Virus record (IMG/VR): IMGVR_UViG_3300042147_000020
Span: 1-64,000 of that record
Length of the DNA: 64,000 nucleotides
Direction: 5' to 3' (one strand)
Shown piece after piece: positions 1-54,028 of this stretch; within the stretch, counting starts at the first letter, position 1; every line of letters starts with the position of its first letter. Made by a program: the position numbers and the translations under genes. The notes beneath the pieces are model-generated. The model made no database searches, had not been told where the DNA came from, and was given only the letters and a program-made list of their open reading frames with translations.

Positions 1-569
1 TGTACAGCAACGAAGTCTTCCGGCGAACCAGTCAACTTGGCCCAGTGTTCCAGAACACGACGGTACTCGTAAGCGATGGTGGCGTTGGTGACCATTTTCC
101 AGATCAGGTTCGACATCGACGTTTCGAGGTAGTTCGTGAACCAGAAGAAATCCGGGTCGGTGTTGTAGATCACGTACAGCGGCACGTTCATGTTGACACG
201 TGAGCCTTCTGGCAGACCTAGGACTTGGATCGGCAGGTAGCCCAGATCGTGTAGACGTTCCATGCCATCGGTAGGAACTTTACCGACACCCATGTAGTTG
301 TCCATGCGACGCTTGTAACGACGGATCACAGCTTCTTTAGGCTGGGAGAAGAACGACTTGTCCCACAGCTCTTTCAGCTCTTGTAGGATGCCCTGTAGAC
401 CGAACCAAGCAACCTTGTGGTCCCAGAACTTGGACGCCGACACCGACTTCAGGAACAAACGATCAGCACGAGCTGTCAGGTTCCCGTAAGTGTAGTTGGT
501 GTGCAGAGGGAACATCTGACGGTGTGGGATTTTGTAACCGTCAGCAACGTGAGGGGCGAACAGGTTCAT
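1..569 (-). CDS. Nicotinamide phosphoribosyltransferase-family protein (likely Namat of NARP1); runs off the left edge of the window
   Basis: Not in the ORF track; translated by hand from ATG at 569: MNLFAPHVADGYKIPHRQMFP...WFGLQG...LHDLGYLPIQVLGLPEGSRV...FFWFTNYLET...WKMVTNATIAYEYR. These are NAMPT/NadV motifs (DxYKxxH, FGLQ, GYLPI, PEG, WxTNYLET). ATGA overlap with the stop of the upstream Prs-like gene. Confidence 0.9.
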   Translation of the reverse strand, partial: MNLFAPHVADGYKIPHRQMFPLHTNYTYGNLTARADRLFLKSVSASKFWDHKVAWFGLQGILQELKELWDKSFFSQPKEAVIRRYKRRMDNYMGVGKVPTDGMERLHDLGYLPIQVLGLPEGSRVNMNVPLYVIYNTDPDFFWFTNYLETSMSNLIWKMVTNATIAYEYRRVLEHWAKLTGSPEDFVAV

Positions 570-1495
570 GCAAAAATTCCTTGTACGGAGTGCCAGTAGA
601 TTGCTTGATCAGTAACGCCATCAGGACGTTGGCTGTATTGCGCTTCAGGGTGCCACGAGTTGGTGGTCTCGATGCGGCTGTAGTGACGCTTCAGCTCATC
701 GTAACCTTTGGTGAACAGGCCGTGCGTAACCCACAGTTCCAGAGTGTACGCAGGTTTCGCCGTCAGTGGATCACCGAGGCCGAGAATTGGGTCGAGCTTC
801 TCACGCAGAGCCTTCGCCAGTTCCACGAAGGTGTAACCGCCGTCACAGATGTCGTCGACTACCAACCAGTTCATGTCTGCACGCGGTTCGAAGTTGAAGT
901 CCACGCGAGTACCAGTGATCTTGCCGGTAGCAGTGTCACGGTCTTTAAAGCCACAGACCACGTGAGGACAGCCAACCATGCGAGCCAGCTCGAGGGTCTT
1001 CTTCATAGCGCCAGCATCGGGAGCTACGAGTACGGTGTTGGTCCACGCACCAGTGTTCGCTTCGTTACGACGAGTCATGGCCTTCGCCACCACTTGTGGG
1101 AGCGAGATGTGACGAACACGATCCAACAGCGCCAGACCGGTGTCACTGTGAACGTCCAGCACCGACACGGTAGCGTATTGCTGGGAGTTGATCAGGTCAC
1201 AGAACGGCTTGATGGTCAGCGACTCACCGGGACGCGGTACACGGTCTTGACGAGCGTACGGTAAGTACGGCATCCATAGGTGAATCTGGATGGCCGGGTT
1301 CAGACGACGGATGGCGTCAGTGACCATCAACAGGTCCATGATGTCCGTGCCGTTCTTCAGGTGTGCGGTCAGGTTGACAGCAGTCCATGTAGCGACGGTA
1401 GGGTCGACGTATGGGTGCACTTCACCACCCGGCAACACTTTGGAGTCAGCAGGAAACGAGACAGACGTGTTCCCACGGTTGCTAATCAGAATCAT
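566..1495 (-). CDS. Ribose-phosphate pyrophosphokinase-like protein (likely ADPR-PP synthetase Adps of NARP1)
   Basis: Motifs MPYLPYARQDR, LDVHS, VAPDAGA, KxRD, VVDDICDGGxTF, VTHGLF. Start moved to ATG 1495 (RBS AAGGAAG). Confidence 0.9.
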   Translation of the reverse strand: MILISNRGNTSVSFPADSKVLPGGEVHPYVDPTVATWTAVNLTAHLKNGTDIMDLLMVTDAIRRLNPAIQIHLWMPYLPYARQDRVPRPGESLTIKPFCDLINSQQYATVSVLDVHSDTGLALLDRVRHISLPQVVAKAMTRRNEANTGAWTNTVLVAPDAGAMKKTLELARMVGCPHVVCGFKDRDTATGKITGTRVDFNFEPRADMNWLVVDDICDGGYTFVELAKALREKLDPILGLGDPLTAKPAYTLELWVTHGLFTKGYDELKRHYSRIETTNSWHPEAQYSQRPDGVTDQAIYWHSVQGIFA

Positions 1496-1557
1496 TGGAA
1501 CTTCCTTTTCTTTTTTTACAAAACGGGTTACTCTCACATGATCTTGAGTGTATGTAG

Positions 1558-1583
1558 AAAAAAAAACAAGGGGCCGAAGCCCC
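1558..1583 (-). terminator. Rho-independent terminator
   Basis: GGGGC-CGAA-GCCCC hairpin followed by a T-tract on the minus strand. Confidence 0.7.
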
Positions 1584-1621
1584 GAGTTTTATTCTTCGTC
1601 TGGCGAACTACCCAGTTGCTT

Positions 1622-2668
1622 TTACTGCTCGCATATTTCTACATCCAACGAACGACGGTTAAGGATGGTGGCGAGTGGGGTGTAATCGGAATCGAAAGTT
1701 ACTTCAACCCCGATAGACTCGTTCTCAACCAGAGGTACCTGCACCAAGAGCGCTTGGTACACCTGTGGAACCTGAGTCCACTCAAGATCGCCACTCGATA
1801 AACCGAGCACACACTGCATCTCACGAGAGAACGAAACGCAGTAACCACACGGCTGCCACGCGATAGGCTTGAGGGTGATAACCCCGTCCACGAAGCGCAC
1901 ACCGTATTCATCTTCCACCATGAGGAATTCATGGAGACGCACTTCGATCGGATCACGGTACTCTTTGTCCGTCAGCACCACACCTCGGAACAGCCCCGGT
2001 TTGTACTCGCGATCTTTCAAGAACGTAGCGGTGGTGTAGTGGTGGTCCCAGAATTTATCGTACTGGAAGTTGAATGCCACCTGACCGATTTGTCCGTAGG
2101 CGGCGTCTTGCTTCAGTGAAGGCAGTTCCTCCAACGTACTGCTGATGCGAAAGTCACGGAATTGCATCGACGGCACACTGTACTCCAGACTCACCAAGCC
2201 TGTGTCATTGGCTTGACTGAGCGCTATCTGGCGCTTCAGACACAACAGCTTAACCATCCCACAGGTCACTGGTACCGTGATGTAAGCCATGTCATGGTAA
2301 CCCACGGAGTCATCGCCAGCTCGCCGTTTGTTCACGTAACGGACGTACTCCGTGAACGCATGGTTCTGTACCCAGAGGGGCTTCACACAACTGTGAGCGA
2401 TCGGTTCCAGCCTGATCAAGTCCCAGTAGTACGAACGTTGAGCATGAGGTTCGACCATACGTTTGATCTTGGCCATAGGGCCGTTTCCACCCAGGACAGC
2501 ACCGAGGAAACGAGTGCGTTGGTCACCGAAGAACATCGCGGCGTGAGAAGACAACATACCCACAGCCTGAGCTACTTGCGGGACAGCCATACACTGAGTA
2601 CTGGCTGACTGAATACCGCTAACCAGTTTGTTGACGCTTTCTTCAAGAGCAGGATCGAACGGATTCAT
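1622..2668 (-). CDS. Hypothetical protein
   Basis: Long ORF in the minus-strand operon; probable start MNPFD at 2668. Confidence 0.75.
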   Translation of the reverse strand: MNPFDPALEESVNKLVSGIQSASTQCMAVPQVAQAVGMLSSHAAMFFGDQRTRFLGAVLGGNGPMAKIKRMVEPHAQRSYYWDLIRLEPIAHSCVKPLWVQNHAFTEYVRYVNKRRAGDDSVGYHDMAYITVPVTCGMVKLLCLKRQIALSQANDTGLVSLEYSVPSMQFRDFRISSTLEELPSLKQDAAYGQIGQVAFNFQYDKFWDHHYTTATFLKDREYKPGLFRGVVLTDKEYRDPIEVRLHEFLMVEDEYGVRFVDGVITLKPIAWQPCGYCVSFSREMQCVLGLSSGDLEWTQVPQVYQALLVQVPLVENESIGVEVTFDSDYTPLATILNRRSLDVEICEQ

Positions 2669-2834
2669 GTAAGTACGCCCACCAATTACCAAAGGTTACG
2701 AAAGAGACCATGAAGGGGAGGCAGAGCCATCCCCAAATCGCTGGACCGAAGTGATCTACTGCTCTGATCAAACAGTAGAAGAAGCCAAGTCCACTGAGGA
2801 TCGCCAGCGTTGCGACGATCTGTAGCGCTAGCAT
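2643..2834 (-). CDS. Small membrane protein (2 TM)
   Basis: 63 aa with two hydrophobic segments; fills the gap between flanking genes. Confidence 0.6.
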   Translation of the reverse strand: MLALQIVATLAILSGLGFFYCLIRAVDHFGPAIWGWLCLPFMVSFVTFGNWWAYLHESVRSCS

Positions 2835-3553
2835 TCCACCACCGGTGAGTCACAGGTGTAGCAGTGTTCGCCGAGGTTCATGTTACCTTTCAAATCACCA
2901 GCAGCGCAGGAGGGTTCATCGAAAGGACTGAGCTTAGGGCCCTGATAATCCGCCGGATATACTGGACGCTCTTCACCACCCAGTACATCAGACATGAACT
3001 GAGTGGACTCAGCTACTGTGGACGTACCACGAGGACCGATGTCAGACATGATGTCTCGTTGTGGAGACTGCACCACAGTGATCAGGTCTTGTCGGTAACG
3101 CGTGTCGTAGTCAGGCTCACCCGGCAACACGTTCGCCATGTCAGGGTACATTACCTGAGCAACCTGCAAACCTTTACCAGCGCGTTGTTTCAGCTCAACG
3201 CAGTACTTGGTCACGGCTTCTTCCCCGTGGAGCAAACGAGTGTTACTGCGCATCACCTTGTCGGGTTCAGTCGATTTCACGATGTCAGTCCGCACTTCGT
3301 AAGACGCTACCTTCTCACGCAACCAAGCGTTAGCCTGGTTCTTGAGGATCGCACCCATGACGCTGTTGGGGATGGGTCCACAGATAAACAATTCTGGGAG
3401 TCCCTTGTGTGACAGGCCGACGGTGTACGAGTAGTTCACCGGGTTAGCACCAAACACGGGTGGTGGATTGACCGACAGGATAGCAAAGCCATTCGAGGCG
3501 ATCGAACGTTTGATGTGACGCTTGAGTTGTTTACGGTTGTCAGCAACTTTCAT
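2828..3553 (-). CDS. DUF4262-like protein
   Basis: Motifs YSYTVGLSHKGLPELFICG and QVMYPDxxxVLPGEPDY; GGAG RBS. Confidence 0.7.
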   Translation of the reverse strand: MKVADNRKQLKRHIKRSIASNGFAILSVNPPPVFGANPVNYSYTVGLSHKGLPELFICGPIPNSVMGAILKNQANAWLREKVASYEVRTDIVKSTEPDKVMRSNTRLLHGEEAVTKYCVELKQRAGKGLQVAQVMYPDMANVLPGEPDYDTRYRQDLITVVQSPQRDIMSDIGPRGTSTVAESTQFMSDVLGGEERPVYPADYQGPKLSPFDEPSCAAGDLKGNMNLGEHCYTCDSPVVEC

Positions 3554-3568
3554 TTTAAGCTCCTTAGC

Positions 3569-4030
3569 TTACAGGCGGTATTCGATTGGACCCGTGCCTT
3601 TTGGCAGAGGTTTGATGCGGGTACGGCGACGAGGCTTCTTCACGGCCTCAGGTACGTACATGAACAGGGCTGGCGCAGAGAAATCAGGTAGCCCTTTACG
3701 GACTTGAACCAGTATCGCCATCATCGGGACTTTGGGTGGATTAGACCAATCCATCTCGATGGTGTTTCCGTCACTCCAGCGGATGGTAGAGTCATGGTGC
3801 CGGGCGGCGAACTGAGTGATACCGATGTCTTTGATCTCGCGCTTGATGTCGGTAGCCTTGCCCTTGATCGTGACGTGGTAATAGTAGTTGTCCAGATCCG
3901 TCCCTGAGGCAATTTCAAAGTACGTCAGGTTTGGGTTGACCGGTGCAGTCAGGAGGAAACAACGAGTACCCCCGAATGCCGCAGAACGGTTAGTGGAGTA
4001 CTCTTTCAGTTGTCGAACGATCAAACTCAT
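3569..4030 (-). CDS. Hypothetical protein
   Basis: 153-aa ORF with ATGA overlap to the upstream gene. Confidence 0.75.
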   Translation of the reverse strand: MSLIVRQLKEYSTNRSAAFGGTRCFLLTAPVNPNLTYFEIASGTDLDNYYYHVTIKGKATDIKREIKDIGITQFAARHHDSTIRWSDGNTIEMDWSNPPKVPMMAILVQVRKGLPDFSAPALFMYVPEAVKKPRRRTRIKPLPKGTGPIEYRL

Positions 4031-4434
4031 ACAGCAACTTCCTTAGGTGCGTAGTGGTTGAGGATCACACGGCACTCTGCTTCGGTTGGTGGACGTGGGG
4101 GAGTGTTCTCGAACATCAACCAGATTGCTTCCGTACGACCACGGGATTTGTACCAACCCACCCACAGGCAAACGGGTTGGGAAACCATGTGTCCTTTTTC
4201 GTTCCTCGGAAGTACGTCGATGTCGAGCAGGCTGATCGTAGCGAAGTGTTGGTTCTCTTCGCACTGGTGATTGATACGACGGTTGTCCTCCATTTCAGCC
4301 AGATCACGGATCTCGTTGCAGGTAGCGCAGTTCCAGTTCTCACCGGAGAAAGGGCCCTTCAAGAAACCACACTTCGGGTCAGCCCCGTTCCACGTTTTAC
4401 CACGGGCTAGACAGGCTTGGCATTCAGTAGTCAT
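4027..4434 (-). CDS. Cys-rich hypothetical protein (possible Zn-binding)
   Basis: CxxC...C...CxxC pattern and WYKSRGRT motif; coupled to both neighbours. Confidence 0.7.
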   Translation of the reverse strand: MTTECQACLARGKTWNGADPKCGFLKGPFSGENWNCATCNEIRDLAEMEDNRRINHQCEENQHFATISLLDIDVLPRNEKGHMVSQPVCLWVGWYKSRGRTEAIWLMFENTPPRPPTEAECRVILNHYAPKEVAV

Positions 4435-5033
4435 TACGCAGCTCTCTTGAGTTCGTTCCCACGGTGGTCAAGGAATTTGGTTGCACGCTCCATACCCTCC
4501 TCCGTGTAGAGATTAATTCGATTCTTAACGCCACACTTGATGGCGAGTTGTAGTGCGGTGTTCGTACCACCTTTGACTTTCTCAGTCTTACCCACGGGTT
4601 TGCCCCAGTAGACAATCGAGCGAACAGGATCAGTAAGACACGCCCCCATGATCTGGAATACGTTTCGAGTGTGCATCGCAATGCCACCACGACCCATACC
4701 TTCCCAACTCCCGCGAGCTTCCAGCGCAATACTGTTAGCAGTTTCCCATGTTGCGAACTTGCTCGCATCGAAGAAGTAGTTCTTTGGATCATGGTAACGG
4801 TTACGTACGCCGTTCCAAGCCAAATAAATACGGGCACCCAACGTGTGGAAGTGAGGAGAGAGTAACGCCCCCTCGTAAAAGGCGGTGTCAGCTCCCTCAG
4901 CGTCGCCAGAGGAGAGTGCGAACCCTTGGGCATACAAAGCCACACTGATTCGCCGCATAAGCTCCAAGATCTCCTCAGGCGTTTCTCGACTACCTACCCC
5001 AGCGTACCAACCTTTGAATGGAATCGGCAACAT
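4434..5033 (-). CDS. SLOG-superfamily / DprA-like nucleotide-binding protein
   Basis: Motifs YAGVGSRETP, LSSGDAEGADTAF, HTRNVFQIMG, KGGTNTA. Confidence 0.8.
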   Translation of the reverse strand: MLPIPFKGWYAGVGSRETPEEILELMRRISVALYAQGFALSSGDAEGADTAFYEGALLSPHFHTLGARIYLAWNGVRNRYHDPKNYFFDASKFATWETANSIALEARGSWEGMGRGGIAMHTRNVFQIMGACLTDPVRSIVYWGKPVGKTEKVKGGTNTALQLAIKCGVKNRINLYTEEGMERATKFLDHRGNELKRAA

Positions 5034-9530: not shown

Positions 9531-9557
9531 GGCATAAAAAAGAGGGCCGAAGCCCTC
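9531..9557 (-). terminator. Rho-independent terminator
   Basis: GAGGGC-CGAA-GCCCTC with TTTTTTATGCC on the minus strand. Confidence 0.75.
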
Positions 9558-53581: not shown

Positions 53582-54028
53582 TTAATAGAGGATGATGCTC
53601 ACAGGTAATTCGGTTTCAGTCAAGTACTTCTCCACCAATGGCTTGAAGTTCTTGAAGTAATCGAGTTGACCCTGACCACACCCCAGTGCCGGGATACCCA
53701 GTTCAGTAATTCCCAACTCTTTGTAGCGTGCCACTAAGTCCTCGAAGCCTGCAATCAGGTACTCTTCTTTACTAGGATTGACGAAGTGTTCTTTCGTCGG
53801 AAACAGTAGGACTTGTTGACAGGAATCTGGAATGGGGTAAACCACAAGCTTACCCACATCCAACTGACCAGTTTTCAGAGCAACCTGATAGAACGCAAGA
53901 AGGCCAGGAGTCCTGAACTTGAAAGCTGCGGCCAACCCGTTCCCGAGTGTGCCCCAGGTATTGACTGGACAGGCTACCGTTTGCAGCCCGCAACTAAAGA
54001 GGGAACCTTCACCTTCAAATGCTATCAT
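53582..54028 (-). CDS. Macrodomain protein (DarG/TARG1-like ADP-ribose glycohydrolase)
   Basis: PVNTxGxLGxGLAxAFK, FPTK (Lys equivalent to the DarG catalytic residue), IPALGCGxGxL. Confidence 0.85.
   Translation of the reverse strand: MIAFEGEGSLFSCGLQTVACPVNTWGTLGNGLAAAFKFRTPGLLAFYQVALKTGQLDVGKLVVYPIPDSCQQVLLFPTKEHFVNPSKEEYLIAGFEDLVARYKELGITELGIPALGCGQGQLDYFKNFKPLVEKYLTETELPVSIILY

What the first reader, a model, noticed from the sequence alone, without database searches (positions are those of the whole stretch)
1..1495. NARP1-type NAD+ reconstitution operon
Seen: a Prs-like gene translationally coupled (ATGA) to a NAMPT-like gene. Established: this pairing is the phage NARP1 pathway (Adps makes ADPR-PP; Namat joins nicotinamide), which rebuilds NAD+ after depletion by Thoeris, DSR or SIR2-type defences. 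Inference: a counter-defence function rather than ordinary salvage. This matters for a nucleus-forming phage because the shell does not protect against metabolite depletion.
Basis: partly seen in the sequence, partly recalled or inferred. Interest (0 to 1): 0.6.

Follow-up and report, generated by a model that had tools for sequence, protein, structure and literature searches.

The report
NARP1 NAD+-rebuilding operon in a chimallivirus
The finding is real: an uncultivated, probably nucleus-forming jumbo phage from rhizosphere soil carries the known two-gene phage pathway (Adps plus Namat) that rebuilds NAD+ after bacterial defences destroy it. This makes it an ordinary new member of a known counter-defence family.

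Summary
On the minus strand, a Prs-like gene (window 566-1495, 309 aa) overlaps by ATGA (566-569) the start of a NAMPT-like gene. Only 189 codons of that second gene lie in the window (3-569). The other 412 codons sit at the far end of the same 238,799-bp record, whose ends share 7 nt in frame. Four relatives carry the gene intact (601 aa in the two nearest, 652 aa in the other two).

The Prs-like protein falls in the Adps clade, together with the biochemically proven ICP1 Adps (bootstrap 100). That clade is separate from cellular Prs, and the window protein has its signature loop DDICDGGYTF. The NAMPT-like protein carries the published Namat motif (GSYTYQYNTRD). Its best match among solved structures is SPbetaL1 Namat, and it clusters with Adps-linked Namats rather than KVP40-type Nampt.

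The genome has no NMNAT, so NARP2 or plain salvage is unlikely. It encodes chimallin and PhuZ homologues, so the "nucleus-forming" label is supported by homology.

The kind is known, and a putative NARP1 has already been called in a cultured chimallivirus (phage Ahti). The modestly new points are two inserts that lengthen Namat in this jumbo-phage clade, and the patchy presence of NARP1 among chimalliviruses. Enzyme activity and protection were not tested.

The parts
566..1495 (-). adps: ADP-ribose diphosphokinase-like gene (Prs fold), 309 aa, protein P0001
   Evidence: ORF and translation. phrog_619 at 243 bits, the same family as the proven ICP1 Adps. It lies in the Adps clade with UFBoot 100 and SH-aLRT 100. 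R82, H116, D160, K184, D214, D215, D218 and F223 correspond to ICP1 R87, H121, D161, K185, D212, D213, D216 and F221.
1..569 (-). 5' part of namat: codons 1-189 (protein P0002). The gene continues at the other end of the record, G000:C1:237556-238797(-), protein P0004, giving 601 aa in all.
   Evidence: The N-terminal part keeps D10 and Y12 (SPbetaL1 D13, Y15) and R37 (R40). The C-terminal part holds GSYTYQYNTRD and the catalytic core.
566..569 (-). ATGA overlap of the adps stop and the namat start (translational coupling)
   Evidence: Sequence. The junction is conserved in L017 and L018, and L019 and L020 keep the same geometry.
1496..1569 (-). Leader of the two-gene unit: an SD-like AAAGGAAG just upstream of the ATG, and an invariant 15-mer GTGAGAGTAACCCGT at 1523-1537
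   Evidence: Alignment of five relatives. The 15-mer occurs only once in the genome. There is no Rfam match and no covariation.
1570..1583 (-). Terminator-like hairpin GGGGCTTCGGCCCC followed by a T run. It ends the upstream gene (1622-2692) and marks the upstream boundary of the operon.
   Evidence: A matching hairpin lies 14 nt after the namat stop, at G000:C1:237525-237542(-).

Best explanation
This is a two-gene NARP1 operon of an uncultivated chimallivirus, bracketed by terminator-like hairpins and translationally coupled.

The first enzyme, Adps, has a Prs fold. It is expected to transfer the beta-gamma diphosphate of ATP onto the 1'' hydroxyl of ADP-ribose, giving ADPR-PP. The second enzyme, Namat, has a Nampt fold plus an adenine-binding selectivity clamp. 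It is expected to join ADPR-PP to nicotinamide and regenerate NAD+ directly.

The substrates are the two products left by NADase defences: Sir2, TIR and SEFIR effectors such as Thoeris I, DSR1/2, SIR2-HerA and the anti-jumbo-phage Avs5. The operon would therefore restore NAD+ in the cytoplasm, where the phage's protein shell gives no protection.

Shown here: gene structure, family and clade membership, diagnostic motifs, conservation and purifying selection. Inferred: the chemistry and the counter-defence effect.
For: Gene structure and ATGA coupling.

Adps:
- It is in the same PHROG family as the proven ICP1 Adps.
- The 28-row clade holding all Namat-linked Prs-like proteins, ICP1 Adps and the window protein is separated from 27 cellular Prs by a branch of 2.48 with UFBoot 100 and SH-aLRT 100.
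- The catalytic Lys and the acceptor-site Arg, His and Asp residues are kept.
- The window's PP loop is DDICDGGYTF, which fits the clade pattern (DDICDGG in most of the 28 rows). Phe at ICP1 position 221 is present in 28 of 28 clade members but in only 1 of 27 Prs.

Namat:
- The motif GSYTYQYNTRD fits the published GSX.X.X.TRD signature (PMC12774641).
- The motif is present in 112 of 120 of its nearest relatives and in 0 of 120 KVP40-NadV relatives.
- SPbetaL1 Namat (9w5x/9w5w) is the best solved match, at 246 bits against about 96 for human or bacterial Nampt.
- Residues equivalent to F189, R192, D215, A242, H245, R306, D308, G360, D361, Y396, T398, R399, D400, D13, Y15 and R40 are kept.
- A 40-row Namat clade is supported at SH-aLRT 100 on a branch of 1.74.
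- A model of the 92%-identical full-length relative (pLDDT 93.5) is closest to Namat, TM 0.94-0.95 normalised to the target.

Context:
- The genome has no NMNAT.
- dN/dS is 0.08-0.13.
- Chimallin and PhuZ homologues are present.
- The pathway's chemistry and its anti-defence role are established for Bas63, SPbetaL1, FADO and ICP1 homologues (10.1101/2024.02.11.579819; PMC13586617).
Against: No activity or phenotype data exist for this phage.

Two aromatic residues that stack on the ADPR adenine in ICP1 Adps are not conserved here: F18 is L21 and F92 is P87. However, position 92 varies across the clade (C, F, P, M), and the window's subclade has Leu at position 18.

The PP-loop residues A218, A219 and S220 of ICP1 are G, Y and T here.

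The Namat has two inserts (about 35 and 75 aa) and a selectivity-clamp loop 8-9 residues longer than in the solved enzyme. Their effect on specificity is unknown.

Namat enzymes keep residual PRPP-dependent Nampt activity (PMC12774641), so some ordinary salvage cannot be excluded.

Identity to the characterised enzymes is modest: about 29-36% to ICP1 Adps, depending on the alignment, and about 36% to SPbetaL1 Namat in the structural alignment of the full-length relative P0005.
Confidence: 0.85

Rival explanations
1. Ordinary NAD+ salvage as an auxiliary metabolic function (NARP2-like or Prs + NadV). The first enzyme makes PRPP, the second makes NMN from nicotinamide and PRPP, and a host or phage NMNAT finishes NAD+.
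For: Both proteins match the Prs and NAMPT/NAPRT families in Pfam, NCBIfam and PHROGs. phrog_448 does not separate Namat from KVP40 NadV. Namat keeps about half of Nampt's NMN-forming activity in vitro (PMC12774641).
Against: The Prs-like protein scores below the cut-off of every NCBIfam Prs model and lies in the Adps clade, far from cellular Prs. The SPbetaL1 Adps gave no PRPP-synthase product in vitro (10.1101/2024.02.11.579819). The NAMPT-like protein has the ADPR-PP clamp motif, which is absent from all 120 KVP40-type relatives. No NMNAT (PF01467) was found in the closed genome, although the control genomes did match.
Confidence: 0.08
2. An extended NARP1-AP pathway. The window's Macro-domain protein (53582-54028, minus strand) acts as an Adpp-like ADPR-1''-phosphate phosphatase and feeds Adps, so the phage would also resist aRES-type defences.
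For: A 148-aa Macro protein is present. It matches phrog_335 'phosphatase', and its best solved matches are of the Appr-1''-p-processing type. Macro phosphatases extend NARP1 in 15% of NARP1 phages (10.64898/2026.01.28.702374).
Against: The gene lies 52 kb from the operon, not inside it. Homologues occur in phiKZ, 201phi2-1, RAY and SPN3US, all of which lack both Adps and Namat. The gene therefore looks like a general chimallivirus gene with another role. It was not compared with a proven Adpp.
Confidence: 0.1
3. A PRPP supply for nucleotide synthesis by a jumbo phage, with the NAMPT-like gene functionally unrelated or decaying.
For: Jumbo phages carry many nucleotide-metabolism genes, and thymidylate synthase lies near the pair in Phabio.
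Against: The two genes are translationally coupled. They co-occur in 18 of 19 viral loci and in all Namat-linked bacterial loci. Both are under strong purifying selection. A PHROG family appears to hold the two as one fused protein.
Confidence: 0.02

Closest known systems
NARP1 of phages Bas63, SPbetaL1, FADO and ICP1 (Adps + Namat; Osterman et al. 2024; PMC13586617; PMC12774641)
   Same: Gene order is adps then namat, as one operon. The Adps clade and catalytic residues match. The Namat selectivity-clamp motif and catalytic core match. There is no NMNAT partner.
   Different: Identity to ICP1 Adps is 29% in the MAFFT alignment and 32-36% in local tblastn matches; identity to SPbetaL1 Namat is about 36% in the structural alignment of the full-length relative P0005. 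The Namat is 601 aa against about 490, with a helical-hairpin insert after the catalytic His and a roughly 75-aa alpha/beta insert after the RPDSGD strand. The clamp loop is 8-9 residues longer. Adps has Leu and Pro where ICP1 has the adenine-stacking F18 and F92, plus a 15-aa insert and a longer C-terminal tail. The host virus is a chimallin-encoding jumbo phage.
Adps/Namat pairs of cultured Pseudomonas jumbo phages (Phabio, PA1C, Psa21, BRkr, HPP-Temi; annotated as Prs and NAPRT) and phage Ahti, where a putative NARP1 was called
   Same: The long-form Namat (575-610 aa) falls in the same starred clade. The Adps proteins are about 39-40% identical. The virus type is also a jumbo phage.
   Different: In Phabio, three small ORFs separate the two genes, whereas here they overlap by ATGA. 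The window's lineage (L017-L020) forms its own subclade at 50-55% Namat identity.
NARP2 (KVP40 NadV Nampt + NatV Nmnat)
   Same: Nampt fold, and phage-encoded NAD+ restoration.
   Different: The KVP40-type enzymes lack the clamp motif (0 of 120), form separate branches in the tree, and need an Nmnat, which this genome lacks.
Cellular ribose-phosphate diphosphokinase (Prs/PRPS)
   Same: Same fold and same catalytic Lys, Arg, His and Asp residues.
   Different: It is a separate clade. The PP loop is DD[IM]xD[ST][AG]GT[LI] instead of DDICDGGxTF. The C-terminal tail is longer (64-68 against 27-53 residues after the THG motif). No Namat neighbour is present.

Membership tests
Adps (NARP1 enzyme 1) | Belongs to the Adps subclade of the Prs family, separate from cellular Prs | tested here: met
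   ML tree of 55 proteins. The 28 Adps-like rows, including the proven ICP1 Adps and the window protein, form one clade with UFBoot 100, SH-aLRT 100 and a branch of 2.48.
Adps (NARP1 enzyme 1) | A Namat gene within 10 genes (the criterion of Osterman et al.) | tested here: met
   The gene is directly adjacent and overlaps by ATGA. This arrangement is conserved in L017-L020.
Adps (NARP1 enzyme 1) | Catalytic Lys185 and acceptor-site Arg87, His121, Asp161, Asp212, Asp213 and Asp216 (ICP1 numbering) | tested here: met
   K184, R82, H116, D160, D214, D215 and D218. These residues are invariant or nearly so in the clade, but they are shared with Prs, so they show an active enzyme rather than specificity.
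Adps (NARP1 enzyme 1) | Remodelled PP loop / ATP-donor site conserved among Adps homologues | tested here: met
   The window has DDICDGGYTF, which fits the clade pattern (DDICDGG in most of the 28 rows). The residue equivalent to F221 is Phe in 28 of 28 Adps and 1 of 27 Prs. ICP1's own A218, A219 and S220 are not matched (G, Y, T here).
Adps (NARP1 enzyme 1) | Aromatic residues contacting the ADPR adenine (ICP1 F18 and F92) | tested here: not met
   The window has L21 and P87. Position 92 varies in the clade (C 9, F 6, P 5, M 5). Position 18 is Phe in 22 of 28 and Leu in the window's subclade. This is therefore not a family-wide feature, but it leaves acceptor binding untested here.
Adps (NARP1 enzyme 1) | Loss of the PRPS C-terminal alpha11-alpha12 regulatory/filament module | tested here: inconclusive
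   The tail after the THG motif is 53 residues, against 64-68 in Prs and 27-53 across the Adps clade. No structure of this protein was modelled.
Adps (NARP1 enzyme 1) | Makes ADPR-PP from ADPR and ATP, and not PRPP from ribose-5-phosphate | not testable with these tools
   This needs purified protein and LC-MS.
Namat (NARP1 enzyme 2) | [quoted passage not shown] | tested here: met
   GSYTYQYNTRD in P0004, aligned to GSFTYQYNTRD of SPbetaL1 Namat. The motif is present in 112 of 120 nearest relatives and 0 of 120 KVP40-type Nampts.
Namat (NARP1 enzyme 2) | Selectivity-clamp loop supplying an Arg, Lys or Tyr that stacks on adenine (SPbetaL1 R40) | tested here: met
   R37 aligns with R40. The loop is 8-9 residues longer than in SPbetaL1, so the geometry is not verified.
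Namat (NARP1 enzyme 2) | Nampt-like catalytic core (SPbetaL1 D13, Y15, F189, R192, D215, A242, H245, R306, D308, G360, D361) | tested here: met
   All are conserved. S190 is Ala, A362 is Ser and F392 is Tyr.
Namat (NARP1 enzyme 2) | Falls in the Adps-associated Namat clade, not the Nampt/NadV clade | tested here: met
   Quick ML tree of 64 proteins. A 40-row clade is supported at SH-aLRT 100 on a branch of 1.74, and it holds ICP1 Namat and all Adps-adjacent rows. KVP40 NadV and bacterial Nampts lie outside it. Only the C-terminal 413 aa of the window protein were used.
Namat (NARP1 enzyme 2) | Prefers ADPR-PP over PRPP and yields NAD+ directly | not testable with these tools
   This needs an enzyme assay.
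NARP2 (Nampt + Nmnat) | A phage-encoded NMN adenylyltransferase partner | tested here: not met
   PF01467 has no match in the 238.8-kb record, while it matches all 14 control genomes.
NARP1-AP (NARP1 with Adpp phosphatase) | A Macro-domain phosphatase gene inside the NARP1 operon | tested here: not met
   The only Macro gene is at 53582-54028, 52 kb away. Its homologues occur in chimalliviruses that lack NARP1.
Chimalliviridae (nucleus-forming phages) | Chimallin shell protein, PhuZ tubulin and phiKZ-type split RNA polymerases | tested here: met
   tblastn with phiKZ proteins gave: gp54 E 6e-32 at C1:78311-79846, PhuZ E 4e-32 at 98681-99640, gp55 E 1e-83, gp74 E 8e-104, and DNA polymerase E 2e-164. 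This is homology only; no nucleus was observed.

The most novel reading that the evidence does not exclude
The two inserts that lengthen Namat to 575-690 aa in the jumbo-phage clade are a helical hairpin after the catalytic His and a roughly 75-aa alpha/beta subdomain after the RPDSGD strand. They may not be neutral. They could form an added regulatory, oligomerisation or localisation module that adapts NARP1 to the compartmentalised infection cycle of chimalliviruses. One example would be early cytoplasmic action against the vesicle-associated Sir2 NADase Avs5. In that case this lineage would be a functionally distinct NARP1 variant.
Probability: 0.12. Interest if true: 0.5.

Novelty: new member of a known kind. 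Interest (0 to 1): 0.3.

Why it matters
A protein shell protects chimallivirus DNA from nucleases but not from loss of a cytoplasmic cofactor. A Sir2 NADase (Avs5) has recently been shown to stop such phages by hydrolysing NAD+ to ADPR and nicotinamide (PMC12931631). A NARP1 operon is the obvious answer to that weakness.

Among the chimalliviruses checked, its presence is patchy. It is present in this lineage and in Phabio, PA1C and Psa21. It is absent from phiKZ, 201phi2-1, RAY and SPN3US. It could therefore help predict which jumbo phages escape NAD+-depleting defences, which is relevant to choosing Pseudomonas phages.

The finding itself adds one more uncultivated carrier and a correct annotation (Adps/Namat rather than Prs/NAPRT). 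It does not reveal a new mechanism.

Tried and rejected
- Megablast of window 1-3000 against the phage collection found no match.
- 'Relatives' cannot be drawn for a virus record.
- The ICP1 Adps structures are not in the held PDB copy, so only canonical PRPS chains matched P0001. I aligned against the ICP1 sequence instead.
- My guess at the Bas63 accession hit another BASEL phage. Bas63 and SPbetaL1 Adps were therefore not in the trees.
- phrog_448 does not separate Namat from Nampt, so I did not use it as evidence.
- Idea: the conserved leader is a riboswitch or a general promoter. There is no Rfam match, no covariation, and the 15-mer is unique in the genome. Rejected; the element stays unexplained.
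- The sigma-70 scan gave nothing above chance.
- A RyR-domain (RyDEP) partner is absent.
- The ESM Atlas feature search of the Namat insert gave no usable hit.
- Read laying showed that the likely source run's contig also ends at window base 1. An independent rhizosphere run has a 503-nt contig running 410 nt past base 1, but the tool does not show those letters, so this gave no direct proof of closure.
- The joined 601-aa Namat of this genome was not built or sent to any tool. The two halves were searched separately by reference. The natural full-length relative P0005 (92% identical over the C-terminal part) stood in for the fold.
- Complex prediction was not used. A stable Adps-Namat complex was already tested and not found for SPbetaL1 (PMC12774641).

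Full report
**Observation.** The stretch holds two minus-strand genes.
- The first runs from the ATG at 1495 to the TGA at 568-566 (309 aa, P0001).
- The second starts at ATG 569-567, so the two share ATGA at 566-569. Each start is preceded by an AAGGAA Shine-Dalgarno-like motif.
- P0001 matches the two Prs domains in Pfam and phrog_619 at 243 bits. It stays below the curated cut-off of every NCBIfam Prs model, for example TIGR01251 at 93 bits against 113.
- The second protein's 189 residues inside the window (P0002) match phrog_448 and the NAMPT N-terminal domain.

**The second gene is cut by the contig end.** The window is bases 1-64000 of a 238,799-bp IMG/VR record called 'linear, 86% complete'.
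- The missing part of the gene (profile positions 192-496) lies at the other end of the record, C1:237556-238797(-) (P0004, 413 aa).
- The last 7 nt of the record equal the first 7 (TGTACAG). Overlapping them keeps the frame and makes one Val codon common to both halves.
- In four related IMG/VR contigs the gene is intact in mid-contig. These are L017 (94% protein identity), L018, L019 and L020. In each, the two halves map contiguously with exactly one shared codon. The intact protein is 601 aa in L017 and L018 and 652 aa in L019 and L020.
- The record therefore closes on itself, and the window's gene is whole.
- I did not build or submit the joined protein. The halves were searched by reference, and the natural relative P0005 stood in for the full length.

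**Is the first gene Adps or Prs?** The structure paper on ICP1 Adps (PMC13586617) names the residues that matter.
- In an alignment with ICP1 Adps, Phabio and E. coli Prs, the window protein keeps R87, H121, D161, K185, D212, D213, I214, C215, D216, G217 and F221.
- It differs at F18 (Leu), F92 (Pro), A218/A219/S220 (Gly/Tyr/Thr) and F223 (Glu).
- I collected 19 viral loci and 80 bacterial loci. The proteins split in two groups. Those at 29% identity or more to the window protein almost always have a Namat-like neighbour: 18 of 19 viral loci and 6 of 7 bacterial loci. Those at about 25% identity never do.
- A careful ML tree puts all 28 of the first group, with ICP1 Adps and the window protein, in one clade. 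UFBoot and SH-aLRT are both 100 and the branch is 2.48.
- Within the clade the PP loop is mostly DDICDGG-x-TF, against DD[IM]xD[ST][AG]GT[LI] in Prs. The Phe at ICP1 position 221 is present in 28 of 28 clade members but in 1 of 27 Prs. ICP1's F92 and F223 are not clade-wide.
- The window protein fits the clade consensus better than ICP1 does.

**Is the second gene Namat or Nampt?** The Namat structure paper (PMC12774641) defines a selectivity clamp. It consists of a helix motif, GS-X-phi-X-phi-X-phi-TRD, with aromatics that stack on the adenine of ADPR-PP, plus a variable loop that supplies an Arg, Lys or Tyr.
- P0004 has GSYTYQYNTRD.
- The best solved-structure matches are SPbetaL1 Namat, 9w5x/9w5w, at E 4e-72. 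H. ducreyi NadV scores 2e-54, and human or Xanthomonas Nampt about 1e-26.
- The catalytic-core residues are kept, and R37 aligns with the clamp-loop R40.
- The motif occurs in 112 of the 120 best relatives of P0004 and in none of the 120 best relatives of KVP40 NadV, the PRPP-preferring NARP2 enzyme.
- In a quick ML tree, all Adps-linked proteins, ICP1 Namat and the window protein form a 40-row clade. SH-aLRT is 100 and the branch is 1.74. The KVP40-type and bacterial Nampts lie outside it.
- A model of P0005 (pLDDT 93.5) is closest to Namat, TM 0.94-0.95 on the target.

**Alternatives.**
- The genome has no NMNAT, which argues against NARP2 or plain salvage.
- It has no RyR-domain protein.
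- Its one Macro-domain gene (53582-54028) is 52 kb away. It has homologues in chimalliviruses that lack NARP1, so it is not an operon-linked Adpp.
- Both genes are under strong purifying selection, with dN/dS of 0.08-0.13 against L017 and L018.

**Operon anatomy.**
- A GGGGCTTCGGCCCC hairpin plus T run at 1583-1570(-) follows the upstream gene.
- A GGAGGGCTTCGGCCCTCC hairpin lies 14 nt after the namat stop.
- The leader between them is conserved among relatives and includes an invariant 15-mer that is unique in the genome.
- That element has no Rfam match and no covariation, so its role is unknown.

**The virus.**
- phiKZ chimallin, PhuZ, two RNA-polymerase beta-like subunits, DNA polymerase, gp68 and gp69 all have homologues elsewhere in the record. 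It is therefore a chimallivirus by gene content.
- Near-identical DNA occurs in rhizosphere metagenomes from two studies. One of these may be the window's own source, so it is not independent.
- NARP1 is patchy in the family. Adps and Namat are absent from phiKZ, 201phi2-1, RAY and SPN3US. Xanthomonas phage RTH11, whose family was not checked, has only a Nampt-like gene and no Adps. The pair is present in Phabio, PA1C, Psa21, BRkr and others.
- A 2026 paper already lists a putative NARP1 in the nucleus-forming phage Ahti (PMC13573597).
- Avs5, a Sir2 NADase that yields ADPR and nicotinamide, was shown to block chimallivirus nucleus formation (PMC12931631). That gives the pathway an obvious target.

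**What is somewhat new.**
- The window's Namat belongs to a long-form clade (575-690 aa) typical of jumbo-phage contigs.
- Relative to SPbetaL1 Namat it has an insert of about 35 aa after the catalytic His, modelled as a confident helical hairpin.
- It also has an insert of about 75 aa after the RPDSGD strand, modelled as a small alpha/beta unit with pLDDT 62-95.
- Their function is unknown.

**Verdict.** Both the observation and the interpretation are supported. This is a new, uncultivated member of a known counter-defence pathway. The chemistry and the protection are inferred from homology to tested enzymes and were not shown here.

Noticed in passing
window 1-7 and G000:C1:238793-238799: The record's two ends share TGTACAG and split one gene in frame. 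Relatives have that gene intact. The 'linear, 86% complete' record is therefore most likely a closed circle or a circularly permuted genome of about 238,792 bp.
   Followed up: yes
G000:C1:237556-238797(-) (P0004 residues 69-103 and 172-246); P0005 residues about 257-291 and 360-434: The long-form Namat has two inserts relative to the solved SPbetaL1 enzyme: a helical hairpin and a roughly 75-aa alpha/beta unit. They are shared by a clade of jumbo-phage Namats (575-690 aa, including Phabio, Psa21, BRkr, D6 and RP31). No look-alike was found for the second insert.
   Followed up: partly
window 53582-54028 (-): A 148-aa Macro-domain protein matches phrog_335 'phosphatase', and its best solved matches are of the Appr-1''-p-processing type. 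It is conserved in many chimalliviruses, including ones without NARP1. It could act on ADP-ribose derivatives.
   Followed up: partly
window 1523-1537 (-): The 15-mer GTGAGAGTAACCCGT lies in the adps leader. It is invariant in five relatives down to 68% protein identity, although the flanks diverge. It is unique in the genome and has no RNA family or covariation support. Its role is unexplained.
   Followed up: partly
window 1570-1583, 9542-9557; G000:C1:75679, 78152, 84925, 92537, 142853, 237525: Eight GC-stem/UUCG-loop hairpins followed by T runs were found, all on the minus strand. They look like this phage's intrinsic terminators.
   Followed up: no
PHROG family phrog_12872 (547 positions): Adps-like proteins match profile positions 5-222 and Namat-like proteins match about 255-539. 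The family therefore seems to contain natural Adps-Namat fusions.
   Followed up: no
L037-L040, L042, L045 (Verrucomicrobiota, Flavobacterium, Pedobacter and Acinetobacter contigs): These bacterial genomes carry Adps-clade genes next to Namat-like genes. This agrees with the report of bacterial NARP1. The Pedobacter Namat (L040) lacks the clamp motif and branches first in the clade.
   Followed up: partly
window 1622-5033 (-): The genes upstream of the operon are a 356-aa protein with no family match, a DUF4262 protein (2828-3553), two small unknown proteins, and a DprA-like protein (4434-5033, phrog_768). Erwinia phage RAY also has a DprA-like gene, there placed next to its Macro gene.
   Followed up: no
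Xanthomonas phage RTH11 (OQ790161.1: 71035-71898): This jumbo phage has a Nampt-like gene but no Adps, so it may be of NARP2 type. It also holds the closest named homologue of the window's Macro protein (43% identity).
   Followed up: no
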